This document shows positions 348 to 35,270 of a stretch of DNA of 64,000 bases, piece after piece. The stretch lies in IMG/VR virus record IMGVR_UViG_3300035698_035310, positions 1-64,000 of that record; one strand, given 5' to 3'. Every line of letters begins with the position of its first letter. Position 1 is the stretch's first letter. A program made the position numbers and the translations under genes. A model generated the notes under the pieces. That model did no database searches. It was not told where the DNA came from and worked only from the letters and a program-made list of their open reading frames with translations.

Positions 348-1532
348 ATGATACCTATGTGGATTTTCATGGGTTTGGGTGCTTTTTCATTAGCGGCGTG
401 TGCTGCTTTTTTTAGTATTACCGGACTTGCTTCATTATATGCCGCCGCGTTTATACCGGTTGTTATAATGGCGACAGTAGTAGAATACGGAAAAGTAACG
501 GCGACTTTTTGGTTACACCAAAATCATAAAAAAGCCCCAAAGATATGGTGTGTATTATTAACACTGGCAGTTTTGGGCGCAATGGCAGTGACAAGTGGTG
601 GTGTTTATGGATATTTGTCTAAAGGACATCTAGAACAAGAAACACCCATCGTTGATACCAATCTTCAGATAGAACGGATAGATGGCAAGGTAACGTCGCA
701 CAAAAATGCGATAAAACGCGCACAGCAACGAATAGATCAGTTGGATGGCGTTGTGGAAAAGTTGATAGAATATTCTAGAATACGTGGCGCAGATGGCGCA
801 ACGGCGACTCGTAAATCACAAACCGGCGAACGTGCAGAAATGCAAGAATCTATTAATATGGCATATGTTGAAATAGATACATTGATGGAAAAACGATTGC
901 CATTAAGGCGAAAAACCGCAGCAATAGAAGCAAAGCTTGGGCCGGTTAAGTATCTAGCAGAGTTATTTGGCGCGGATACAGATACATCGGTGCAATGGTT
1001 TACGTTATTGATTGTTTTATTGCTCGATCCATTTGCTATTGTTATGGTTATAGCAACTAGTATTAATTATAATGAATGGAAAGAAGAAAAGAATAAAGCA
1101 AAAGACAAAGATGAAAAAACTCAAGCAGCGATAGAAACTATCGAAAATATAGTCGAAGTCATAAAAGAAGTTGAAGTCATAAAAGAAGTTGAAGTCATAA
1201 AAGAAGTTGAAGTTATAAAAGAAATTGAAGTTATAAAAGAAGTTGAAGTTATAAAAGAAGTTGAAGTTATAAAAGAAATTGAAGTTATAAAAGAAGTTGA
1301 AGTTATAAAAGAAGTTGAACCATTAACGATGGACACAATGTCTGATTTTCTTAACGATAAACATGTTCAAGCCGAATTGGTTAAAAATCCAGAACTTATT
1401 GCTACGGTGGAAACAATTTTAGATGAAGCTAAAATCAAAGATGAAAAAACAACATCGGATGGATGGATTTCGCGTATTGGTGAAAATATTAATTTTACAG
1501 CTAATCCCACAAGCACTGACGATACGAAATAA
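348..1532 (+). CDS. Membrane-anchored coiled-coil hypothetical protein with EVIKEV repeat
   Basis: N-terminal hydrophobic helices, coiled coil, further TM near residue 215-240; late promoter upstream. Confidence 0.8.
   Translation: MIPMWIFMGLGAFSLAACAAFFSITGLASLYAAAFIPVVIMATVVEYGKVTATFWLHQNHKKAPKIWCVLLTLAVLGAMAVTSGGVYGYLSKGHLEQETPIVDTNLQIERIDGKVTSHKNAIKRAQQRIDQLDGVVEKLIEYSRIRGADGATATRKSQTGERAEMQESINMAYVEIDTLMEKRLPLRRKTAAIEAKLGPVKYLAELFGADTDTSVQWFTLLIVLLLDPFAIVMVIATSINYNEWKEEKNKAKDKDEKTQAAIETIENIVEVIKEVEVIKEVEVIKEVEVIKEIEVIKEVEVIKEVEVIKEIEVIKEVEVIKEVEPLTMDTMSDFLNDKHVQAELVKNPELIATVETILDEAKIKDEKTTSDGWISRIGENINFTANPTSTDDTK
1155..1316 (+). repeat. Nine tandem 18-nt coding repeats (EVIKEV/EVIKEI)
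   Basis: gaagt(c/t)ataaaagaa(g/a)tt x9, in frame. Confidence 0.95.
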
Positions 1533-10285: not shown

Positions 10286-10734
10286 CGCTTAATAAGATAG
10301 GGATGAGATTCTCGGGAAGTAATTCGAAATCACTCAGAAGAGTGGGTCCAATTGCGATATTTCACAATGGTCGAACAAATTTATTAAGAAGTTGCCTGAA
10401 TTTGAAATAACGGTAACAGATGACAAGCATATCAAAATGCTCTGGTTGTAGGCGGTAGGAAGTATAGACTCTCTTATCATGTCATGGAGGAACGGGCTTT
10501 AATATAGCTGAAAAGCGTATATAAAGGGTTCATTGGCTGAAAGCCTTTGATGTAGCTGTGGACGTTCAAGGGTGGTGGCACCATGACACTAGATCGAATA
10601 AAAGAACGTGGTCGTGCGATAAGGCGCGGGGTGGGTACCAGGACTCCACCGAAACAGATCGAACACTGGATAGGATAATCGGGACGGCCTCCGACCTATC
10701 GACGGATTAATATCCTTAGCCGATTAATAAATTC

Positions 10735-12019: not shown

Positions 12020-12973
12020 ATGAAGACAATAAAAGAATGGATTGAATGCAATCTTATAAAAGAAAATGGTTCATTGAATGAACGACGAATGGGAAAGTTG
12101 TCCAAAAAAGATAGTAGAACGTGGGTGGAAAAACATCATATCGATAGATTTGATGTTATAATAAAATGGGGAAATGGAAGGTCGTTTAAAGAATGCGTCT
12201 ATATGATATTACAAAATATAATAAACATACCATCATGTAAGATATGTGATAATGATGTAGCATTTATAGATAATAAAAATGGTTATAGATTATATTGTTC
12301 AACTGTATGTATGAATAATGACCCAGAAAGAATAATAGAAATAGAAAAAACTAAAAGATCAAATGGTTCATATGATCAAAAAAGAAAACGATTAGAAGAA
12401 ACTAATATAAAAAAATATGGAAAACCGTTTTTTGTTAATAGAAAAAAAGGAAAAGACACATTAAGAAAAAACTTTGGCGTTGATCATCCGGCACAATCGT
12501 CTATCGTTAAAAAGAAAATGAAAGATACAATGGTTAAAAAATGGGGCGTAGAAAATCCCATGTATATATCAACTTTTGTTGATAAAATGATACAAAGTAG
12601 AGGAAATAAAATAACCGGAAGTATCAGGTGTAGAATAAAACGATTTGGTGATAAAGAGATTCCATATCAAGGAACATATGAAAAAATATTTTTAGAAAGT
12701 TTATCGAATAAAAATATCGAACGAATAAAAAGAGGTAATAAAGCAGTTTATTTTATAGACGGGAAACAAAAAACATATTATCCAGATTTTGTTATAGAAA
12801 ACACAGTTTATGAAATAAAATCGAAATGGACGTGGGATAATAAAGGTAAGAATAAAAGATTAAGAGTAATAAACAAGTTGAAGTTGAGATCGGCTAAACG
12901 GCAAGGTCATAATGTCATTTTGGTATTAGATCATAAACAGTTAACTTACAACGAAGCAATACGCTTGTTATAA
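12020..12973 (+). mobile_element. Free-standing homing endonuclease (PD-(D/E)XK, TnsA-like C-terminus) inserted in the TROVE gene
   Basis: CKIC, YCSTVC, KKWGVENP-type repeats, YYPDFVIENTVYEIKS. Confidence 0.8.
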
Positions 12974-12987
12974 AGGAGACCAAACCA

Positions 12988-13983
12988 ATGCAAGTTATAG
13001 ATAAGAAATTTTTAAAAGATAAAGATAATGTTGTATTCACAGATGAATTTGATATTATTAATGGTGTAAAATACCAAAAAGTTAAATGGGATATAGAGCA
13101 TCCAAAAATGGGTCTGATGGCAAGAGTTCGAAATCTTCGTAATTTAACCAAGCATGATGTTGATTTGGATTACACTATAAAATGTTTGACTGATGCTAAC
13201 GCAGTCAAAAAATCAAAGATGCTCCCGTTTCGCTGGTATTCGGCGTATAGAGAACTTGGTGGTTCTGGAATAGAAGCAAACAATCATTGGTATTATAAAG
13301 AACCAGCTAAACCAGACGTTATGGCTTCACCACATTTGTTGGCTGCATTGGAAGATGCATTTGACATGAGTGTATCCAATTTGCCAGACTTGGGCGATGA
13401 TGTACTTATCGTAGTTGACCAAAGTGGTTCTATGTAAGACACTATCAGCCAACATAGCACAGTAACATGTGCTGAAATCGCTAGTGTGCTTGGTGCTGCG
13501 GTGTGGTTCAATCAGATTCGCCAAGGTAAAAAAGCTATGGTAGCAGGTTTTGCATCCACTGGAAAGGTTTACAATTGGAGTGCACGAACTAGTGCGCTTG
13601 CTGCGGCTAAAGAAATGATGAACACCAGTTTGGGTGGTGCAACGAATATCGGCACTGCGTGGGGTGCTGCAAAAATGGCTAATCTTAAACCATCAACTAT
13701 TGTGGTTCTTAGTGATATGCAAATGACTGGCGATAGCCGCGCTCGTTATAATACAATTATGGTTCCAGAGCAATACGGTCTTGCTGATGATGACACTTTG
13801 AAAATAAGTATCAACATTAAAGGTTATGATAATAGCCCGTTGGCTATGAACAATGGCTGGATTCAAATTGCTGGATGGTCAGAAAAAATATTTGATCTTA
13901 TTGACGCAATGCGCAAACCAGGTGATGCTGTTAAGTTGATTAATGATCTTGATTTAAACTTGACAAAGTCGCAACAGGTATAG
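12988..13983 (+). pseudogene. rsr: TROVE/Ro60 C-terminal half incl. vWA domain, with in-frame TAA at 13435-13437
   Basis: KMGLMARVRNLRNL, SKMLPFRWYSAY, VDQSGSM*DTISQHSTVTCAEIASVLGAA, GGATNI, LSDMQ, GWSEKIF. Confidence 0.8.
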
Positions 13984-17095: not shown

Positions 17096-17287
17096 ATGAA
17101 CGATAAAGATGAAATGCTACAAATTATTGGCGAACTTAAAAATGGTGCGATGGATATTCTTAAAAAAATACAAAATCATGAATTATCAGAAGACGAGTTG
17201 TTATACTATATGAATATAGCAGATGATGCAAACAGCATACTTGCTGGAACAATTAAAAAAATAGATGAAGCGCAAAAAACTACTTGA
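17096..17287 (+). CDS. Hypothetical protein
   Basis: AAGGAG RBS, 63 aa. Confidence 0.6.
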   Translation: MNDKDEMLQIIGELKNGAMDILKKIQNHELSEDELLYYMNIADDANSILAGTIKKIDEAQKTT

Positions 17288-17312
17288 CAATCTAAAAAGG
17301 GTGTTGTATAAT
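17284..17312 (+). promoter_or_regulatory. Consensus sigma70 promoter of the attenuator/tRNA array
   Basis: TTGACA-N17-TATAAT. Confidence 0.85.
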
Positions 17313-17484
17313 GCCTAAAGTTAAAAAATGATAAATACTTTTACGGTGAACATCTTCGCCATGGTGAAATACCCAAAACCCAATTAAGTGGATGTGAAAA
17401 AACATAGAACAAAACGCCATGGTGGCGTATTATTTGAATCGGCTTTAAAAACTTTTTAAGCCTAACGAGAAAAGGAACCGAGAT

Positions 17485-17646
17485 ATGACTTCTACTTTTA
17501 AACATAAACATATAGATACAGGGACCATTTGTAATGGTAACGGTATTGTTGTGTTTATGCGCAATGTAGTGAGAAATACAAATGATACAAAACGAGGTTG
17601 GGATTTTACCAACTTTATCAAAGGCAAAGGAGTTAACGGGCATTAA
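17485..17646 (+). CDS. Attenuator leader peptide, 53 aa (MTSTFKHKHIDTGTICNGNGIVVFMRNVVRNTNDTKRGWDFTNFIKGKGVNGH)
   Basis: AAAGGA RBS at 17471; below the ORF-track cutoff; contains antiterminator segment tatcaaaggc (17616-17625). Confidence 0.75.
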   Translation: MTSTFKHKHIDTGTICNGNGIVVFMRNVVRNTNDTKRGWDFTNFIKGKGVNGH

Positions 17647-17674
17647 AACCTAAAATTCCAGTTCAAACAGAACT

Positions 17675-17710
17675 AAAAGCCTTTGATAGAAATATCAAAG
17701 GCTTTTTTTA
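17675..17710 (+). terminator. Attenuator terminator
   Basis: gcctttgata-gaaa-tatcaaaggc followed by ttttttta. Confidence 0.9.
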
Positions 17711-17721
17711 TTGAGCAAACG

Positions 17722-17960
17722 AGATCGAATACAGTGTTAACGCGGAACGAGACTGCTAGGAACACTTAAAATATACCTAATATGGGCGCGTTGTGGATGG
17801 ATTTCCTTTTGTGGAATGATAAAAGCAATGGTAGGAAGCAAAGCGACCTACTAGGGAAAGCGTTATATGCTTTCCTGATAAGTTATTTTGTATGGAAGTG
17901 CCATTAAAGCAGAACAATTGGTTTGGCGACCAAGCACCTTCGGGGCATAAAATCTGCTAC
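17722..17960 (+). ncRNA. Candidate ornate RNA immediately after the attenuator, opening with AGATCGA
   Basis: tagg/ccta, tggtagg/cctacta, ggaaagc/gctttcc, gcaga/tctgc, ttggt/accaa, c-UUCG-g. Confidence 0.5.
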
Positions 17961-17996
17961 TACTATACTATTTTAATCATAACTAAGTGTCACAAA

Positions 17997-18400
17997 ATAT
18001 TGTATGGTGTAGTGGTAACACGCTGCCTTTATCGGCGGAGCCGTGGGTTCGAGTCCTACTATGATATTTGGATTACGTTCAGTGTGCACACCGAACGCCA
18101 CAAATTATCTGTTATTATCGCGATAGTGATAGATAATGTTGGGTCACTTAGTTATGATTAAAGTTTTTAGGGTGTTCGTCTAGTGGATTAGGACGCGCCG
18201 CCTTGGGTAGTTGGAGTTCGATTCTCCTTAGCAACGGTTACGTAAATCCGCACGGTGAGACATTGGTTCGAATCCAATACATGTTAAAATAACGATTTCA
18301 CATGAGATGTATAGTTTTAATGGATAAATCAGGCATGAGCCTTGTGCGGCAAGATAGTGGGTTCGATTCCCCTTGCGTTGAATGTGAAATGATGCTATAT
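17997..18400 (+). ncRNA. Degenerate tRNA-like elements (17997-18068, ~18169-18285, ~18295-18390)
   Basis: Four GGTTCGA/GAGTTCGA T-arms and D-arm-like segments but defective anticodon or acceptor arms. Confidence 0.55.
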
Positions 18401-18425
18401 TGGTTTTTTAATATAGGAGATAATA

Positions 18426-18980
18426 ATGGAACTAGAAACATATCTTAAAGATTATGGCTTAACTGATGATATTATACGTTATGCTATATTCACTGGTACA
18501 TTAACCAAATATAGTATTTCAGATTGGCGTGTTATATGTTATATAATCGACGATCCTGATTTAGATCGTGAAACAAAAGTAGCCATGATTGAAAAAGCAT
18601 TTAAAGATGATAAATGGCGTGCCAAAGAATTATTTGTTTTTATTGAAACATTAAATCAATTTGTAAAAGCAGATGATATTCTTTCAGGGGCACACGAAAA
18701 AGATTCATGGGGAAAAGGTACACCATCTGAGCAATTTGCCATATCAGTGTCGCTCTGTGAAGCACTTAAAAAAATGAAAACCGAAAATAAATTAAACAGC
18801 GATGAACAAATTGATGTTTTTGACCGATTTGTTGTATACATTATGGATATGTTTTCACCCGAAATGGTTGTGTTGACATTCAGACATGCTATCAAACAAT
18901 ATGGTATAAAATTCGATATACATAAACATTCCGAATTTAAAAAAGCAATGAAAGCATATAATCGTATAATATTAGCATGA
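18426..18980 (+). CDS. Hypothetical protein resembling the C-terminal part of phage MoxR-like ATPases
   Basis: DDILSG...ISVSLCEAL...EMVVL segment; recalled similarity only. Confidence 0.4.
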   Translation: MELETYLKDYGLTDDIIRYAIFTGTLTKYSISDWRVICYIIDDPDLDRETKVAMIEKAFKDDKWRAKELFVFIETLNQFVKADDILSGAHEKDSWGKGTPSEQFAISVSLCEALKKMKTENKLNSDEQIDVFDRFVVYIMDMFSPEMVVLTFRHAIKQYGIKFDIHKHSEFKKAMKAYNRIILA

Positions 18981-19282
18981 AAGCATATAAATTATTCAAA
19001 AAACGAAAAGATGGTTCAATTGGACCACTTTTCATTAATGCCAAAATGCGTATACCATTAAATGTGTGGCTGGATGCTGAAGATCATCCAACCAAAGGTT
19101 ATGCACATAGACCAGGATGGCATGCTGGCGCTGAACCAAATGCACCACACCTAAGTGAAAAAGGACGCGTTTGGTATGAAGTAGAAATAAAAGACTTTGT
19201 GACATTTAAACGACCCATCAATCAAGGTGGTGAATGGTTGATTGCACAAAAAATCAAAGTGATAGGTGAATATCACAAATAA
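18977..19282 (+). CDS. Conserved phage hypothetical protein
   Basis: MKAYKLF..RKDG..GPLFIN...HPTKGYAHRPGWH. Confidence 0.7.
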   Translation: MKAYKLFKKRKDGSIGPLFINAKMRIPLNVWLDAEDHPTKGYAHRPGWHAGAEPNAPHLSEKGRVWYEVEIKDFVTFKRPINQGGEWLIAQKIKVIGEYHK

Positions 19283-19285
19283 TAT

Positions 19286-19360
19286 GGACCGGTAACTCAG
19301 AGGCAGAGTGTTCGCCTTTTAAGCGAAACGTCGGGATTTCGAAATTCCCCCGGTCTACCA
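19286..19360 (+). tRNA. tRNA-Lys(TTT)
   Basis: ttcgc-ctTTTaa-gcgaa; CCA encoded. Confidence 0.9.
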
Positions 19361-19369
19361 ATCACTTAT

Positions 19370-19444
19370 GCACGATAGATAACTGGGGTTACGACGGCTT
19401 TTACATGGCTGTTGTGGTGGGTTCGATTCCCACATCGTGTACCA
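19370..19444 (+). tRNA. tRNA-Val(TAC), atypical D arm
   Basis: cggct-ttTACat-ggctg; CCA. Confidence 0.75.
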
Positions 19445-19455
19445 ATACAATATAT

Positions 19456-19530
19456 GGACCGGTAGCTCAGAGGCAGAGCGTTCGCCTCTTAAGCGAAATG
19501 TCGAGATTTCGAAATTCTCCCGGTCTACCA
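19456..19530 (+). tRNA. tRNA-Lys(CTT)
   Basis: ttcgc-ctCTTaa-gcgaa; CCA. Confidence 0.9.
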
Positions 19531-19539
19531 ATACCTTAT

Positions 19540-19614
19540 GCTCGATAGATAACTGGGGTTACGACGGCTTTAACATAGCTGTTGTGGTGGGTTCGATTCC
19601 CACATCGAGTACCA
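19540..19614 (+). tRNA. tRNA-Val(AAC)
   Basis: cggct-ttAACat-agctg; CCA. Confidence 0.75.
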
Positions 19615-19697
19615 ATATTTTTGATACACATAATGGTTTAGTGTATTGATAAACCGGCTGTGGGTGAAGCGGTATAACAAATGTCTACCCCCAATAT

Positions 19698-19772
19698 GGT
19701 CGTGTAGCTCAAAGGCAGAGCATTCGCTTTACATGCGAAAGGTTGTGATATCGTAATTCACCACGACTACCA
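19698..19772 (+). tRNA. tRNA-Val(TAC)
   Basis: ttcgc-ttTACat-gcgaa; CCA. Confidence 0.85.
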
Positions 19773-19827
19773 ATATTGCTTTTTAGTTGTATAGTATGCT
19801 ATTATTGTTTTTTATAGGAGATATATA

Positions 19828-20220
19828 ATGGAATATGCATGGAATGATAAAATAGTTGAAGCGAATTTTAATTTTGATTCTGCGTATGAACATACGGAAT
19901 GGGGATGTGATGATGGATATACATCATTATCGGTGTTGATTAATCGATGCCAAAATATGATAAAACTAAGATACACAAATGTTAATCGCATCCCGCCAAA
20001 AGTGCCTATGCCGATAACGCCGTGGTCGTTTGTTCTTGATGACATAGATATAGTAGTATATATGACATTGCGGTGCTATGATATATTTCTTATGGACACA
20101 AAAACGTTTGATTATAGGCAGCATTTTACTATTAAAATCGATGACGATATGGATGATAATATAATAATAGTGTCATCTGTTGATAATGTATATACAGAAG
20201 CAATAAGAATTCTAAAATAA
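19828..20220 (+). CDS. Hypothetical protein
   Basis: AGGAG RBS, 130 aa. Confidence 0.65.
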   Translation: MEYAWNDKIVEANFNFDSAYEHTEWGCDDGYTSLSVLINRCQNMIKLRYTNVNRIPPKVPMPITPWSFVLDDIDIVVYMTLRCYDIFLMDTKTFDYRQHFTIKIDDDMDDNIIIVSSVDNVYTEAIRILK

Positions 20221-20256
20221 TATCTAACGCAGTGCTAATCACATAAGCCGTTATTT

Positions 20257-20331
20257 GCAGGGGTAGCTCAGTGGTAGAGCGGTTGGTTGAAGCCCAGCGC
20301 GTGAGGAGTTCGATTCTCTTTCCCTGCACCA
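20257..20331 (+). tRNA. tRNA-Phe(GAA)
   Basis: gttgg-ttGAAgc-ccagc; CCA. Confidence 0.9.
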
Positions 20332-20343
20332 ATACAATAATAT

Positions 20344-20419
20344 GGAACCCAGGTATATCTGGTGAGTACGCGTGGTTGAAGTTCACGAGGACGCAGTTCG
20401 ATCCTGCGGGGTTCCACCA
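20344..20419 (+). tRNA. tRNA-Phe(GAA)
   Basis: cgtgg-ttGAAgt-tcacg; CCA. Confidence 0.85.
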
Positions 20420-20434
20420 ATCAAAGACCATTAT

Positions 20435-20509
20435 GGACCGTAGGTGTAATGGCTGCATCCGAGCCTTTTAAGCTCAGGGGACAGAGTTCGATTCTCTGAT
20501 GGTCTACCA
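20435..20509 (+). tRNA. tRNA-Lys(TTT)
   Basis: gagc-ctTTTaa-gctc; CCA. Confidence 0.85.
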
Positions 20510-20518
20510 ATAATCAAT

Positions 20519-20594
20519 GCCGTATTAGTGACACTGGCTAACACGCCTGTTTTGTAATCAGGAAAATGGGGATCGATACCTCAATATGGCACCA
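20519..20594 (+). tRNA. tRNA-Thr(TGT)
   Basis: cctgt-ttTGTaa-tcagg; CCA. Confidence 0.8.
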
Positions 20595-20611
20595 ATAAAT
20601 AATACTATAGA

Positions 20612-20686
20612 GCCTCTGTAGTTAATCTGGTATAACGGTAGATTTGTAATCTTCAATGCGCGGTTCGAGTCCGTGTGGAGGCACCA
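20612..20686 (+). tRNA. tRNA-Thr(TGT)
   Basis: gtaga-ttTGTaa-tcttc; CCA. Confidence 0.85.
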
Positions 20687-20692
20687 ATAAAA

Positions 20693-21457
20693 TTAATCAT
20701 TGTGTAGTTGCGTTTTTTCATATTCATCGACATCAAGTTTTAATTGTTTATATGTGATAGATGATGTATTACGTTTTTTTACATTATCTTTCTGAAGCAT
20801 TATTTCACAATTTAATGGATGTGTAATATAATATGGATCATACTTGTTAACAATTGATTCATTTATAGATATTTTATGATCCCTCGCTACACCGTTTGAA
20901 TTTTTCTTTGGGACATACCAACCATGTTTTTTTATTAAATCTAAATTGAGTAGATTGGGATAATCATTGACATCAAATTTGAAATAATATGGACGTTTCG
21001 TAGTTTGAAGTTCTTTTGCTGTTCTACCATATTGTTCAACGCAGCATTGACATTTTGATATATACCGATCTTTGGCGGTGAAAAGTGTAATACAGGTGGA
21101 GCAAGTTCTAAACCATACCATGGAATATTCACCATCGATATATTTTTTTAGTTTATCCCATCTTTTTGGATAATGACCAATATCTTTTATGATTTTGATA
21201 TGACTTTTACTCATTCGTTCTTTAGTTTCATTGCTATGTTTGCGACGGCTATTATTATATTTGGCGGCACAAGATTGATTACAATATTTCTTTTTTATAA
21301 GTGCTTCATCGTATGACCATGATTTGCCGCATTGGTTGCATGTTTTTGGATTTTTATTATATTCGGCAATGCGATGGTTTTTTTGATTTATTTGCGTTTT
21401 TCGTGAAGCTATAAATCCTAATTTACCAGCTTCAGATTTGGACAATTTACATGTCAT
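20693..21457 (-). mobile_element. Free-standing HNH-type endonuclease, tRNA-array family copy 1
   Basis: CNQC/YCNQSC fingers; FKFDVNDYP...GVARDH...HPLNC...N. Confidence 0.75.
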
Positions 21458-22889: not shown

Positions 22890-22965
22890 TTCAGATGACC
22901 AAGCAAGTGAACGGGACCGCCTGTTAAGCGGATATTGCAGGGAGCGTTACCCTGATCTGGAGCCA
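22890..22965 (+). tRNA. tRNA-Asn(GTT)
   Basis: ccgc-ctGTTaa-gcgg; U1:A72, G73; non-standard T loop. Confidence 0.8.
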
Positions 22966-23594
22966 ATAACTTTATATTTTTTGTCCCATTCATTTATTCG
23001 ATGGTATAAATCATATAATGATAAACTTGAATGACGATTTTTAGATGAATTTTCTGGCTGTGGCATTATCTTGCAGTTCGCTGGATGTGATATATGATTT
23101 GGGTCTATTTTGTTTACAAATCCATCATGTACACTATACATGTGATCTCTTGTTAATCCGTTTTTATTTTTGGTACTATGATACATGCCCTGTTGATGTA
23201 TCATTATAAAATCAAATTCTTCTGGAAATGTTTGAAATGAAAATATAAATTTACATTGTTCTTTATATTTTATCTTCTCAATCATGTATTCTTGTGGTGT
23301 CACCCTCATGGCATTTGTGCAAGTAACTGCACAACTTCTTCCGCAATAATATTCACGAGTTCCGGTTATAGGGCTAAATTTATTATTACATGTTGGATTT
23401 TTACACTCGATTAGTCGTTTTTGATATTTTGTTAAATTTTTTACCGATATTTCTTTTTTGGTGAATATGCAACTACATGTAATATGTGATATTTTACCGT
23501 TGCTTTTGCCATGCATACGTGAATGACCATTCAATGCCATTAAGGATTTAAATTGATTATCGCATATATTACATGTATAAATATCTTTAGACAT
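22947..23594 (-). mobile_element. Free-standing HNH-type endonuclease copy 2 (true start ATG 23594; 3' end overlaps tRNA-Asn antisense)
   Basis: GGAGG RBS at 23601-23605; C2H2 finger; CKFIFSF..FP...GLTRDH...HPANC. Confidence 0.75.
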
Positions 23595-23683
23595 TATCAA
23601 CCTCCATTGGTTGTTATAGTTTAGAAGATATGGGGAATTCCAGTTCTCTATATCTTCGTTAGTATTTATCAATAACATATTAT

Positions 23684-23769
23684 TCGGATATAGGAGAATT
23701 GGTAGACCCAGAAGATTGTTAATCTTCCGCAGCAATGCATTCCAGGTTCGAGTCCTGGTATCCGAGCCA
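23684..23769 (+). tRNA. tRNA-Asn(GTT) with long variable arm
   Basis: gaaga-ttGTTaa-tcttc; gca-gcaa-tgc V arm; GCCA. Confidence 0.8.
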
Positions 23770-23770
23770 A

Positions 23771-23908
23771 TAACACCGTAGCGTAGAAAATAGTTACTTC
23801 GTTTCACTCACGACTGGAATGGGTTCGATTCCCATGCCCTGCGTAAGCAGGGTTTAGTGTAATGGTAGCACAGTATATCTCTATTTTCGTTTTTTACTCG
23901 GTGTTGTT
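23771..23908 (+). ncRNA. yrlA: YrlA-class Y RNA (tRNA-mimic)
   Basis: taacaccg/cggtgttg and gaaaatag/ctattttc end helices enclosing T-arm (atggg-ttcgatt-cccat), loop-closed acceptor (ccctgc-gtaa-gcaggg) and D-arm in permuted order. Confidence 0.8.
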
Positions 23909-28004: not shown

Positions 28005-28150
28005 TATTGTTATAGCTATGGAAATTAGTTCCTTCTTATCCCAACCTGTAGGTCGTAGGTTCGAATCCTGCTCCTCGCGCCAATTATGCGGGGATAGCTC
28101 AGTGGTAGAGCAACTGGCAATTTTACTGGTTCCAATTATTATAGCAATAT
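28005..28150 (+). ncRNA. Circularly permuted tRNA-like RNA / YrlA variant
   Basis: 3' tRNA half with GCCA, linker attat, then 5' half, all inside atattgttata/tatagcaatat stem; CTATGG-N6-GTTCCTTC variant motif. Confidence 0.75.
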
Positions 28151-28368: not shown

Positions 28369-28446
28369 TGACTAGTAGCTCAGTGGTTTAGAGCGGGGAG
28401 TTCTAAACTCTCGACAGCGTTGGTTCAAATCCAACCTGGTCAACCA
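28369..28446 (+). tRNA. Amber suppressor tRNA (CTA)
   Basis: gggag-ttCTAaa-ctctc; intact cloverleaf; ACCA. Confidence 0.85.
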
Positions 28447-28453
28447 ATACTAA

Positions 28454-28625
28454 GCGGGTATCGTATAATGGTATTATCGCAGCCTTCCATGTGATATGTT
28501 TAACATATCTCAGGTTGAGCCATTTATTGGCTCCTTGAAGGTCGAGGGTTCAGACCCCATCCGGTTTAAGCCCGGTAGACCAACTTAAGCTGATGACGGG
28601 AGTTCGATTCTCCCTACCCGCTCCA
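28454..28625 (+). tRNA. tRNA-Gly(TCC) with 98-nt intron at 37/38 (28490-28587)
   Basis: 5' exon ends cagc-ctTCCa; 3' exon a-gctga...TCCA; exons make a standard Gly cloverleaf. Confidence 0.85.
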
Positions 28626-34931: not shown

Positions 34932-35039
34932 TTCCAAGTAGCTCAGATGGTAGAGCGTCTGACTGTGGAACAGATGAGCCTAAAGCTTTGAAGTTCAAAT
35001 TTAATCAGAATGTCGGCGGTTCGATCCCGTCCTTGGAAG
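34932..35039 (+). tRNA. tRNA-Asn(GTT) body with 35-nt insertion in the anticodon
   Basis: tctga-ctGT[insert]Taa-tcaga; U1:A72, G73; no encoded CCA. Confidence 0.75.
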
Positions 35040-35178: not shown

Positions 35179-35270
35179 GCCTCGGTAGCTCAGAAAAGCA
35201 ACGTAAGTTGTAGTGTAGTAGCAGGTGACTGAACCTCACCGTGTCGGTAGTTCGAATCTATCCTGGGGCA
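35179..35270 (+). tRNA. tRNA-Phe(GAA) with hairpin insertion in the D loop
   Basis: ggtga-ctGAAcc-tcacc; caac-gtaa-gttg in D loop; no CCA. Confidence 0.65.

What the first reader, a model, noticed from the sequence alone, without database searches (positions are those of the whole stretch)
17284..17710. Codon-sampling leader-peptide attenuator gating the tRNA array: a candidate phage sensor of tRNA loss
Seen: a consensus promoter, then a 53-codon ORF with RBS, then a strong terminator. The ORF's 3' part contains tatcaaaggc (17616-17625), identical to the terminator's 3' arm (17693-17702), so it can pair with the 5' arm as an antiterminator. The peptide uses only M,T,F,K,H,I,D,G,C,N,V,R,W plus one S, with no A,L,P,E,Q,Y. 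The ~40 intact tRNAs downstream cover exactly K,V,F,T,H,D,R,N,G,W,C,I,M and none of A,L,S,P,E,Q,Y. It samples synonymous codons: all four Gly, all three Ile, three Val, three Thr, and Arg CGC/CGA/AGA matching array anticodons GCG/TCG/TCT. If those six residues are about a third of a normal protein, their chance absence is roughly 1e-9 (my estimate). Established: ribosome stalling in leader peptides controls amino-acid operon attenuation, and host anticodon nucleases (PrrC, PARIS, colicins D/E5) deplete tRNAs. Inference: stalling at any sampled codon frees the antiterminator and switches on replacement tRNAs, i.e. a multiplexed inducible counter-defence. I know of no description of this design.
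Basis: partly seen in the sequence, partly recalled or inferred. Interest (0 to 1): 0.95.

Follow-up and report, generated by a model that had tools for sequence, protein, structure and literature searches.

The report
Conserved leader-peptide attenuator before phage tRNAs
A giant phage carries, just ahead of its block of transfer-RNA genes, a conserved on/off transcription switch driven by translation of a tiny gene. That gene is built almost only from the 13 amino acids whose tRNAs the phage supplies, so it may be a new kind of sensor of tRNA supply.

Summary
The core observation holds. The promoter is a perfect sigma-70 consensus (17284-17312). A 53-codon ORF with a Shine-Dalgarno site follows (17485-17646), then a 14-bp terminator (17675-17706). 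A 10-mer inside the ORF (17616-25) is identical to the terminator's 3' arm.

52 of 53 residues belong to the 13 amino acids served by every confidently called tRNA gene in the window. This is far beyond chance, between 4e-5 and 6e-10 depending on the null.

New evidence: the window is the start of a ~570-kb megaphage. The peptide has 10 homologues, and the whole module is conserved in four related phages.
- The terminator and antiterminator helices covary.
- The geometry is fixed: R2 ends 15-18 nt before the stop codon.
- The reduced alphabet is kept (~91% in-set, and substitutions stay in-set, P~3e-5).
- The tRNA array of a relative follows the same order and set.

Corrections:
- There are 28-30 good tRNAs, not ~40.
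- There is no codon-sampling signal.
- Ten internal consensus promoters mean this genome's terminator can gate only the first ~3 kb (conserved ncRNAs, two ORFs, Lys/Val/Phe/Thr tRNAs).
- The peptide has a conserved core (TND-KRGW), so it is not a pure codon sampler.

Verdict: a real, conserved, translation-coupled attenuator. tRNA-pool sensing is plausible but unproven, and the counter-defence role is conjecture.

The parts
17284..17312 (+). Sigma-70 consensus promoter (TTGACA, 17 nt, TATAAT). The -35 hexamer overlaps the stop codon of the upstream 63-aa gene.
   Evidence: 12/12 match. It is one of 20 plus-strand promoters at >=11/12, against 1 on the minus strand and 1.9 expected per strand. 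It is conserved in L020, L021 and L025.
17320..17484 (+). Long conserved 5' leader (~165 nt) with a small conserved hairpin at 17414-17428 followed by a U-rich stretch. It also holds a direct repeat, CGCCATGGTG, at 17357 and 17415.
   Evidence: The transcript 17320-17715 folds with z = -7.2 against shuffles. Predicted long-range pairing of the leader with ORF codons 31-39 shows no covariation, so it is unproven.
17472..17476 (+). Shine-Dalgarno AAGGA, 8 nt before the ATG.
   Evidence: invariant GAGAAAAGGAA.CC block in the relatives.
17485..17646 (+). Leader ORF, 53 codons plus TAA (protein P0001).
   Evidence: Codon-usage log-odds +11.9, within the range of real genes (mean 17, sd 6.6). There are 10 homologues of 48-57 aa. 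dN/dS is 0.33-0.88, and only synonymous changes fall in the TNDTKRGW codons between the window and L022.
17616..17625 (+). R2, the upstream strand of the antiterminator (codons 44-47), identical to the terminator 3' arm.
   Evidence: It pairs with 17679-17688 (dG -12.9 kcal/mol). This pairing is the minimum-energy fold for transcripts ending at 17688-17702. It covaries with R3 in the relatives.
17629..17674 (+). Conserved spacer that contains the stop codon and two small hairpins. These form the inner arms of the antiterminator three-way junction.
17675..17712 (+). Intrinsic terminator: 5' arm 17675-88 (R3 = 17679-88), loop 17689-92, 3' arm 17693-17706 (R4 = 17693-17702), then a U-tract.
   Evidence: dG -17.4 kcal/mol. 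94% paired across 5 phages, with 3 compensatory pairs.
17735..17895 (+). Conserved structured RNA of unknown family ('RNA X'), the first product downstream of the terminator.
   Evidence: This is the most conserved DNA of the module. 8 of 40 predicted pairs show compensatory changes. No Rfam match.
17968..18166 (+). Y-RNA-like element: a 17-18 bp closing stem around a tRNA-like domain (17997-18068, with a 6-nt 'anticodon' loop).
   Evidence: A TROVE/Ro60 gene lies upstream in the relative. The comparison is with YrlA-type Y RNAs (PMC4201824).
18169..18381 (+). Two degenerate or insertion-bearing tRNA-like genes.
18426..19282 (+). Two protein genes (184 aa; 101 aa = phrog_12224) in the same promoter-less stretch.
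19286..20686 (+). First tRNA cluster (Lys, Val, Lys, Val, Val, a 130-aa ORF, then Phe, Phe, Lys, Thr, Thr). It is the last part of the unit that this terminator can gate. The next consensus promoter is at 20804.

Best explanation
The element is a conserved, ribosome-dependent transcription attenuator. It sits at the head of the non-coding-RNA and tRNA operon of a ~570-kb phage.

Proposed mechanism:
1. Host RNA polymerase starts at the consensus promoter.
2. A ribosome loads on the 53-codon leader ORF.
3. While the 5' arm of the terminator emerges, it can pair with a 10-nt segment (R2) lying 15-18 nt before the leader's stop codon. That pairing blocks the terminator, so transcription runs on. 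The downstream products are the conserved RNA X, a Y-RNA-like RNA, tRNA-like genes, two small proteins and the first tRNAs.
4. If the ribosome has already run over R2 and sits at the stop codon between R2 and R3, the antiterminator cannot form. The 14-bp terminator then folds and transcription stops.

Smooth translation of the leader therefore shuts the operon, and slow or blocked translation opens it.

The leader, and its homologues through evolution, is written almost only in the 13 amino acids for which the phage array encodes tRNAs. All 13 are present in every homologue. The most likely signal is therefore the decoding capacity for exactly those tRNA species. That would give a feedback or induction loop for phage tRNA supply.

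Shown: the anatomy, its conservation, the covariation, coding constraint on the ORF, and the alphabet bias with its maintenance.
Inferred: ribosome control of the switch, tRNA supply as the signal, and any link to host anticodon nucleases.
For: Anatomy:
- The parts are present and rarer than chance.
- The antiterminator is the minimum-energy fold for nascent transcripts ending at 17688-17702. The terminator wins only from 17706 onward. The energies, -12.9 against -17.4 kcal/mol, are close to those I recall for the classical trp leader.

Conservation:
- The whole module is conserved in L020, L021, L022 and L025.
- R2:R3 is 94% paired with 2 compensatory pairs. R3:R4 is 94% paired with 3 compensatory pairs. 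Slid controls give 18-69% pairing.
- The window and L022 each have a perfect R2 = R4 10-mer, although the two 10-mers differ at 2 positions.
- Spacing is fixed: R2 to stop 15-18 nt, stop to R3 34-36 nt.

The ORF is translated:
- 10 homologues of the same length.
- Only synonymous changes in the core codons between the window and L022, and dN/dS below 1.
- Coding-like codon usage.

Alphabet:
- 52/53 in-set, P from 4e-7 to 6e-10 per window.
- 3 of 77,520 random alphabets do as well.
- Homologues are 87-100% in-set, and every member contains all 13.
- 81 of 106 minority residues stay in-set, against 60.6 expected from BLOSUM62 (P 3e-5) and against 58% from single-nucleotide neighbours (P 8e-5).
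- The in-frame codons just upstream of the ATG contain L, P and E.

Context:
- The tRNA set is the same 13 over -37 to +92 kb of the genome.
- The relative's array holds K F T H H C D D G C I M I G R.
- No promoter at >=11/12 lies between the terminator and 20804 here. In the relative, none lies between the leader promoter and 15510, a span holding 13 tRNAs.
- No described precedent turned up in four full-text searches.
Against: - Ten consensus promoters lie inside the tRNA region, plus two minus-strand genes. In this genome only Lys, Val, Phe and Thr tRNAs are directly behind the terminator, while the leader uses 13 amino acids.
- There are no tandem runs of regulatory codons and no excess of synonymous-codon diversity.
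- The peptide has an invariant core kept through synonymous changes. A mere codon sampler would not need one.
- More distant homologues carry 3-7 out-of-set residues, some upstream of R2.
- In three of five phages R2:R3 has a central A.C mismatch. A synonymous AAA-to-AAG change would repair it but has not occurred.
- R2 lies 1-4 nt behind the footprint of a ribosome at the stop codon, not under it. No 1:2 anti-antiterminator was found, so blocking by a terminating ribosome rests on a steric argument (inference).
- All five DNA sequences are related, so the covariation counts are small.
- Only ~130 of ~570 kb was inspected for tRNAs.
- There are no expression data.
Confidence: 0.45

Rival explanations
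1. This is an attenuator driven by a regulatory (arrest-type) nascent peptide rather than by tRNA supply. The conserved core (R-VVG-HTNDTKRGW, with Trp 12-15 residues before the stop) would interact with the ribosome tunnel. It would stall the ribosome in response to a small molecule, a phage or host factor, or general translation stress, and that would set the antiterminator/terminator choice. The comparisons are TnaC, SpeFL and the antibiotic-sensing leaders.
For: - Invariant and near-invariant residues are kept through synonymous substitutions.
- The position of the stop relative to R2 and R3 is fixed.
- AlphaFold gives no folded structure, even with the family alignment (pLDDT 46-52). That fits a peptide acting as a nascent chain.
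- Known leader-peptide attenuators sense generic ribosome stalling, e.g. bmrCD (PMC4191407) and the ribosome-stalling leader upstream of the MexXY regulator in P. aeruginosa, which I name from memory. Both papers appeared in the search hits.
Against: - It does not explain why variable positions stay within the 13-letter alphabet.
- It does not explain why that alphabet equals the phage tRNA set.
- There is no similarity to any known arrest peptide or family.
- Part of the core may instead be constrained by RNA pairing with the 5' leader.
Confidence: 0.2
2. This is an ordinary stand-alone small gene. A 53-aa trans-acting protein would have its own promoter and a simple terminator. The R2 copy and the match between the peptide alphabet and the tRNA set would be by-products: the peptide's own functional constraints plus coincidence. 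Downstream genes would be expressed from other, unrecognised promoters.
For: - The family is conserved at the protein level, with an invariant core.
- The terminator is very strong and is thermodynamically favoured in the full transcript.
- The phage might also use non-sigma-70 promoters that my scan cannot see.
- An all-beta or loop-rich mini-protein would naturally be poor in A, L, E and Q.
Against: - R2 tracks the terminator arms through two substitutions in L022 against the window. A simple terminator has no reason to do this.
- The antiterminator is the predicted nascent fold in 4 of 5 phages.
- The stop codon to R2/R3 spacing is fixed.
- The non-coding spacer and the downstream RNAs are co-conserved with the ORF as one block.
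- No fold is predicted.
- The alphabet match has P of 4e-5 or lower under every null.
- Ser, Pro and Tyr, which are common in beta and loop-rich proteins, are avoided too.
Confidence: 0.2
3. This is a structured non-coding RNA. The ~390-nt transcript from promoter to terminator would be an sRNA, the ORF fortuitous and untranslated, and the conserved sequence a reflection of RNA structure only.
For: - The transcript folds much better than shuffles, z = -7.2.
- The 5' leader and the spacers are highly conserved.
- Long-range pairings between the 5' leader and ORF codons 31-39 are predicted.
Against: - The reading frame, start, Shine-Dalgarno site and length are kept in 10 homologues, despite 35-60% amino-acid divergence and indels in multiples of three.
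- Five synonymous third-position changes and no replacement fall in the core between the window and L022.
- Codon usage is coding-like, while the shifted frames score strongly negative.
- The predicted leader-to-ORF pairings show no covariation and are not kept in L022.
Confidence: 0.05
4. The real gene is the 100-codon ORF on the opposite strand (17341-17643). It is in register with the leader codons, which would indirectly remove Leu and Ser codons from the plus frame.
For: - The antisense ORF is longer than the leader and codon-aligned with it. Its codon log-odds are mildly positive.
Against: - It is not conserved. The longest open antisense stretch falls to 60-78 codons in the four relatives.
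- The promoter, Shine-Dalgarno site and U-tract are all on the plus strand.
- Gene callers chose the plus ORF.
- It would explain only the loss of TTA, CTA and TCA, not the whole alphabet.
Confidence: 0.02

Closest known systems
Classical ribosome-mediated transcription attenuators of enterobacterial amino-acid operons and pheST (trpL, hisL, thrL, ilvL, pheL, pheM)
   Same: - A short translated leader ORF lies behind the promoter.
- An intrinsic terminator precedes the regulated genes.
- A mutually exclusive antiterminator uses the terminator's 5' arm.
- Control is kinetic, with helix energies of the same order as trp.
- thrL and ilvL already respond to more than one amino acid, and pheM controls a translation-apparatus gene.
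- Rfam His_leader and Phe_leader give weak, sub-threshold matches to the 3' half.
   Different: - There are no runs of regulatory codons. Instead, 13 amino acids are spread over ~40 codons and the other seven are nearly excluded.
- The leader is 50-57 codons, against 14-32.
- R2 lies inside the ORF, upstream of the stop, and no 1:2 anti-antiterminator is evident. An untranslated transcript is therefore predicted to read through, not to terminate.
- The 5' leader is long and structured (165 nt).
- The regulated products are non-coding RNAs and tRNAs of a phage, not biosynthetic enzymes.
Regulatory nascent-peptide leaders (TnaC, SpeFL; antibiotic-responsive leaders such as those of bmrCD, ermC/ermB and the one upstream of the MexXY regulator in P. 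aeruginosa)
   Same: - The leader peptide sequence is conserved, with an invariant Trp about 12-15 residues before the stop.
- Ribosome position decides a transcription-termination outcome.
- Some of these leaders sense general ribosome stalling.
   Different: - There is no sequence similarity to any of them.
- Termination is intrinsic, not Rho-dependent as in tna and speF.
- No ligand is known.
- The alphabet match to a tRNA set has no counterpart.
T-box riboswitches
   Same: They work on the same logic: sense tRNA status and choose between antiterminator and terminator ahead of translation-related genes.
   Different: - T-boxes bind uncharged tRNA directly and need no ORF.
- No T-box or other Rfam family matches here.
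- Each T-box reads one tRNA species.
Phage tRNA clusters as counter-defence (T5, T4 and others; PMC10264068) and the Salmonella rsr-yrlBA-rtcBA RNA-repair operon induced by damaged tRNAs (PMC7790460)
   Same: - The shared theme is a phage tRNA array next to Ro60/TROVE, Y-RNA-like RNAs and RNA ligases.
- Induction in response to tRNA damage is an established idea for rtcBA.
   Different: - Those phage clusters are not known to be controlled by a leader peptide.
- rtcBA is controlled by the protein activator RtcR, not by an attenuator.

Membership tests
Ribosome-mediated (leader-peptide) transcription attenuator | Short ORF with a ribosome-binding site between the promoter and the regulated genes | tested here: met
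   ORF 17485-17646 with AAGGA at -8. The start, Shine-Dalgarno site and length are conserved in the relatives.
Ribosome-mediated (leader-peptide) transcription attenuator | Intrinsic terminator downstream of the leader ORF and upstream of the regulated genes | tested here: met
   14-bp stem plus U-tract at 17675-17712. It is conserved, with 3 compensatory pairs. No promoter at >=11/12 lies before 20804.
Ribosome-mediated (leader-peptide) transcription attenuator | Alternative antiterminator helix that uses one terminator arm and is mutually exclusive with the terminator | tested here: met
   R2 17616-25 pairs with R3 17679-88, 10/10 bp, -12.9 kcal/mol. It is the minimum-energy fold until 17702. 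It is 94% paired across 5 phages with 2 compensatory pairs, and has one A.C mismatch in 3 of them.
Ribosome-mediated (leader-peptide) transcription attenuator | Geometry in which ribosome position on the leader decides which helix forms | tested here: inconclusive
   R2 is inside the ORF and ends 15-18 nt before the stop. The stop lies 34-36 nt before R3, and both distances are conserved. However, a ribosome at the stop would not cover R2. Blocking by that ribosome is a steric inference. No 1:2 helix was found.
Ribosome-mediated (leader-peptide) transcription attenuator | Regulatory codons cognate to the regulated product, enriched in the leader | tested here: inconclusive
   There are no tandem runs and no codon-sampling excess. 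Even so, 52/53 residues, and ~91% across the family, are amino acids whose tRNAs the array encodes. All 13 are present in every member.
Ribosome-mediated (leader-peptide) transcription attenuator | Read-through depends on translation of the leader | not testable with these tools
   This needs reporter, Term-seq or in-vitro coupled assays.
Regulatory arrest peptide (TnaC/SpeFL/SecM type) | Conserved peptide motif required in cis | tested here: inconclusive
   The invariant residues C16, R26, V29, D34, K36-W39 and G47 are kept through synonymous changes. A cis requirement was not tested. There is no homology to known arrest peptides.
Regulatory arrest peptide (TnaC/SpeFL/SecM type) | Sequence-specific ribosome arrest | not testable with these tools
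   This needs toeprinting or ribosome profiling.
T-box riboswitch | Stem I/specifier and T-box sequence recognised by the covariance model | tested here: not met
   No T-box hit at the gathering threshold or at E<=10 in 17200-19300.
Stand-alone small protein family with a known fold or function | Match to a described protein family or solved structure, or a confident predicted fold | tested here: not met
   - Pfam: none.
- PHROGs: a single-member hit at E 0.004, not shared by the family.
- PDB: best E 0.5.
- AlphaFold pLDDT 52 (single sequence) and 46 (11-sequence alignment).

The most novel reading that the evidence does not exclude
The leader is a multiplexed tRNA-pool sensor. Its peptide is kept by selection within exactly the 13 amino acids whose tRNAs the phage supplies. 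A shortage of any one of those tRNAs would therefore slow the ribosome before R2 and switch on the operon. The shortage could come early in infection, from codon-usage mismatch, or from cleavage by host anticodon nucleases. The operon encodes replacement tRNAs and Y-RNA/Ro-type RNA-repair RNAs. Shortage of the seven host-supplied species would be ignored.
Probability: 0.3. Interest if true: 0.95.

Novelty: new variant of a known kind. Interest (0 to 1): 0.8.

Why it matters
Leader-peptide attenuation is textbook regulation for amino-acid operons. It has not, as far as four literature searches and my own knowledge show, been described for tRNA genes, for phage RNA-repair-type RNAs, or with a leader that reads a whole set of tRNA species.

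If the switch works as proposed, it shows three things:
- Giant phages that carry their own translation apparatus also monitor translation and adjust their tRNA output.
- There is a compact, portable sensor of tRNA availability or ribosome stalling.
- The idea that phage tRNA arrays answer tRNA-targeting host defences becomes directly testable with a simple reporter.

Even the conservative reading is new: a conserved translation-coupled attenuator ahead of a Y-RNA-like/tRNA operon in a 570-kb phage lineage. It comes with clear mutational predictions.

Tried and rejected
- **Near-identical relatives.** All other copies of the locus (IMG/VR, JGI, ENA, Logan) are 99.9-100% identical, so they add no comparative power. 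Megablast and tblastn against INPHARED phages found nothing for the locus or the peptide. The word-indexed protein search found only the peptide itself. Homologues appeared only with the exhaustive HMMER search and a profile search.
- **More relatives by DNA or profile.** An invariant 23-mer from the downstream RNA and a profile scan found only this phage in viral contigs, metagenome contigs and genome contigs.
- **A second array or leader for A/L/S/P/E/Q/Y.**
  - Walking from -37 kb to +92 kb found only one extra Val and one extra Met tRNA.
  - No paralogue of the leader exists in the 359-kb contig.
  - About 440 kb remains unseen.
- **Known RNA families.** No T-box or other family matches. 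Only sub-threshold PyrR, Phe_leader and His_leader matches appear, driven by the terminator.
- **Antisense 100-codon ORF.** Not conserved.
- **Deliberate synonymous-codon sampling.** No signal.
- **phrog_21913 similarity.** Not shared by the family.
- **Structure prediction.** Uninformative or unfolded.
- **Other phages' tRNA arrays (L010-L012).** A quick scan for alphabet-matched small ORFs showed nothing comparable, but those loci are partial.
- **Neighbouring 101-aa gene.** It is widespread in unrelated phages without synteny, so it is useless as an anchor.
- **Weak tRNA-like calls.** At very relaxed ARAGORN settings these gave 'Pro' (21570) and 'Tyr' (35179). I do not accept them.
  - The first is below Rfam significance.
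  - The second reads as a Phe-GAA anticodon arm with a D-loop insertion when inspected by eye.
Full report
**1. What the window is**

The window is the first 64 kb of IMG/VR contig IMGVR_UViG_3300035698_035310 (359 kb). The same phage is assembled elsewhere as ~570.6-kb contigs. It is AT-rich (35% GC).

The neighbourhood is a 'translation island'. It holds EF-Tu, EF-Ts, EF-G, IF3, RF1, ribosomal proteins L33 and S21, AspRS, ClpX, GreA, Cpn10 and RNA ligases. No close relative is in the INPHARED phage collection.

Consensus sigma-70 promoters are a real feature of the plus strand. There are 20 at >=11/12 (six perfect), against 1 on the minus strand and 1.9 expected per strand.

**2. Checking the observation**

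- a 12/12 promoter at 17284-17312;
- an ORF at 17485-17646 (53 aa) with AAGGA 8 nt upstream;
- a perfect 14-bp, 4-nt-loop hairpin with a U-tract at 17675-17712;
- the 10-mer TATCAAAGGC at both 17616-25 and 17693-17702.

The 10-mer occurs only at these places in the window (0.17 expected). Of 15 terminator-like hairpins in the window, this is the only one with an upstream copy of its 3' arm of 10 nt or more.

The peptide has 52 of 53 residues in K,V,F,T,H,D,N,G,W,C,I,R,M and one Ser. ARAGORN at default settings finds 28 tRNAs. Rfam finds 27-30 above threshold. All decode those 13 amino acids, plus one CTA suppressor.

Several estimates show how unlikely the match is:
- The binomial probability against the phage's own protein composition is 6e-10 to 3e-9.
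- A beta-binomial null absorbs frame and composition heterogeneity. It gives 4e-7 per 53-codon window, or 6e-4 over all 1436 windows examined.
- Empirically, the next-best locus among 19,000 stop-free windows scores 48/53, against a mean of 33.
- With the peptide fixed and the alphabet randomised, 3 of 77,520 alphabets do as well.
- The in-frame codons immediately upstream of the ATG contain Leu, Pro and Glu, so the bias starts at the ORF.

Three sub-claims fail or shrink:
- '~40 intact tRNAs' counts degenerate and insertion-bearing tRNA-like pieces.
- No confident tRNA has anticodon TCG.
- Synonymous-codon diversity is exactly what genome codon usage predicts: 26 distinct codons against 25.7+-1.75.

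**3. Homologues change the picture**

The word-indexed search found only the peptide itself. Exhaustive HMMER and then a profile search found 10 homologues of 48-57 aa at 36-65% identity.

DNA could be fetched for four distinct relatives:
- L020, L021 and L022, which are ~1-kb contigs;
- L025, identical to L027 over the 1.2 kb compared, from 234-kb and 257-kb contigs.

The whole module is conserved as one block. The block comprises the promoter, the 165-nt 5' leader with its small hairpin, the Shine-Dalgarno site, the ORF, the spacer, the terminator and about 450 nt of downstream non-coding sequence. In the large contigs it is syntenic: EF-G, RNA ligase, AAA, ClpX, TROVE/Ro60, IF3, a 73-aa gene, then the leader and the tRNAs.

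**4. The ORF is a translated gene**

- The frame, start and length are kept, and indels are in whole codons.
- Between the window and L022, the eight core codons (TNDTKRGW) carry five synonymous changes and no replacement.
- Pairwise dN/dS is 0.33-0.88.
- Codon-usage log-odds are within the range of real genes, while shifted frames are strongly negative.
- The in-register 100-codon antisense ORF is not conserved, so I reject it.
- No known family, solved structure or confident fold matches.

**5. The switch is conserved**

On the five-sequence alignment, R2:R3 (antiterminator) is 94% paired with two compensatory pairs. R3:R4 (terminator) is 94% paired with three. Slid controls give 18-69% pairing.

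The window and L022 each have a perfect R2 = R4 10-mer, although the two 10-mers differ at two positions. In L020, L021 and L025 the antiterminator has one central A.C mismatch.

Nascent-transcript folding predicts R2:R3 as the minimum-energy structure until the last bases of the 3' arm emerge. The terminator wins after that. This holds in the window, L020, L021 and L022. L025 has two alternative 7-8-nt R2 candidates.

Helix energies are -12.9 kcal/mol (antiterminator) against -17.4 (terminator). By my recollection these are of the same order as in the trp leader. Spacing is fixed: R2 ends 15-18 nt before the stop codon, and the stop lies 34-36 nt before R3.

**6. The alphabet is a maintained family trait**

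Homologues are 87-100% in-set. P0002 scores 51/51, P0003 49/50, P0004 49/53, P0005 48/51 and the rest 43-46 of 48-53. Every member contains all 13 in-set amino acids.

Among 106 distinct minority residues at variable columns, 81 are in-set. BLOSUM62 with the phage background predicts 60.6 (z = 4.0, P 3e-5). Single-nucleotide mutational neighbours predict 58% (P 8e-5). Leu appears once and Pro never, although Ile, Val and Met vary freely.

The relative's array, in the 10 kb seen, is K F T H H C D D G C I M I G R. It follows the same order and set as here. Walking this genome from -37 to +92 kb added only one Val and one Met tRNA.

**7. What the terminator can control**

Directly downstream lie:
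- a conserved structured RNA of unknown family, with 8 of 40 pairs compensatory;
- a Y-RNA-like element, which is a long closing stem around a tRNA-like domain (compare PMC4201824);
- two degenerate tRNA-like genes;
- two protein genes;
- tRNAs for Lys, Val, Phe and Thr.

The next consensus promoter is at 20804. Nine more follow inside the tRNA region, and two minus-strand genes of a family that recurs in other phages' tRNA arrays interrupt it. In this genome the terminator therefore gates about 3 kb, not the 30-kb array.

In the relative, 13 tRNAs for nine amino acids lie between the leader promoter and the next promoter at >=11/12. A leader-gated array is thus plausible as the ancestral arrangement.

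**8. Mechanism and its weak points**

My best reading is a translation-coupled attenuator. A ribosome that has passed R2 and sits at the stop codon prevents R2:R3, so the terminator forms. A ribosome delayed anywhere in codons 1-39, or absent altogether, leaves R2 free and transcription continues. The alphabet evidence makes decoding capacity for the phage-supplied tRNA species the most economical signal.

Weak points:
- R2 is just behind, not under, a terminating ribosome.
- There is no anti-antiterminator.
- The peptide has an invariant core that a pure sampler does not need. This suggests an added arrest-peptide or RNA-pairing constraint.
- More distant leaders tolerate a few out-of-set residues.
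- There are only five related DNA sequences.
- Only about 130 of 570 kb was inspected.
- Nothing is known about expression.

The anticodon-nuclease trigger is conjecture. It fits the neighbourhood (Ro60/Y-RNA-like RNAs, RNA ligases, tRNAs) and published ideas (PMC10264068, PMC7790460), but I have not tested it.

**9. Comparison and novelty**

The element works like the classical leader-peptide attenuators and meets their anatomical criteria. It differs in several ways:
- it has no codon runs;
- the leader is longer;
- R2 lies inside the ORF;
- the predicted default state is read-through;
- the cargo is non-coding RNAs and tRNAs of a phage.

It is not a T-box. Four literature searches found no description of a leader-peptide attenuator in front of tRNA genes or phage tRNA arrays.

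I rate it a new variant of a known kind, with a 0.3 chance of being a genuinely new sensing logic: a multiplexed tRNA-pool sensor.

Noticed in passing
window 17968-18166 (also L021 ~760-920, L025 ~10485-10670): A 17-18 bp closing stem encloses a tRNA-like domain (17997-18068, with a 6-nt 'anticodon' loop). This looks like a YrlA-type Y RNA. A 525-aa TROVE/Ro60 gene lies ~2 kb upstream in the relative. In the window the corresponding region appears to be split into ORFs 12020-12973 and 12988-13437.
   Followed up: partly
window ~17735-17895: The most conserved DNA of the whole module is a multi-hairpin RNA of unknown family, between the terminator and the Y-RNA-like element. 8 of 40 predicted pairs are compensatory, and there is no Rfam match.
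   Followed up: partly
window 20693-21457 (-) and 22947-23807 (-); L010, L011, L012: Two paralogous minus-strand genes (phrog_23051, one with a C2H2 zinc finger) interrupt the tRNA array. Homologues sit inside the tRNA arrays of three unrelated IMG/VR phages. They are likely a mobile element that targets tRNA clusters.
   Followed up: partly
window 18169-18286, 28454-28622, 34932-35039, 35179-35270: These tRNA genes or tRNA-like genes carry long insertions (about 17-98 nt; intron-like or a D-loop insertion). Their isotype calls are uncertain.
   Followed up: partly
window 28369-28446: A tRNA with anticodon CTA (amber suppressor; ARAGORN labels it 'Pyl'). It hints at possible TAG recoding in part of the genome.
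   Followed up: no
window 28048-28114: A weak YrlA (Y-RNA-like) Rfam match (32 bits, below threshold) lies inside the tRNA region, next to further tRNA-like fragments.
   Followed up: no
whole window, plus strand: There are 20 sigma-70 consensus promoters at >=11/12 (six perfect) on the plus strand, against one on the minus strand. This part of a 570-kb phage appears to be transcribed by host RNA polymerase.
   Followed up: yes
window 17357-17366 and 17415-17424: A second 10-nt direct repeat (near-palindromic CGCCATGGTG) lies in the 5' leader. Its second copy forms the conserved small hairpin 17414-17428, which is followed by a U-rich stretch. A 19-codon mini-ORF (17328-17387) spans the first copy. 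This may be a second regulatory layer.
   Followed up: partly
window 1155-1310 (in ORF 348-1532): An 18-nt tandem repeat (about 8 copies) lies inside a 394-aa ORF with no family match.
   Followed up: no
L017 8353-10891 (about 18-21 kb upstream of the window): The EF-Tu gene appears split into a 77-aa and a 296-aa piece, with a GIY-YIG endonuclease gene just upstream.
   Followed up: no
L008 18771-21380 (about 70-73 kb on the contig): An 869-aa protein shows major-vault-protein shoulder and Vault_3 domain hits, which is unusual for a phage.
   Followed up: no
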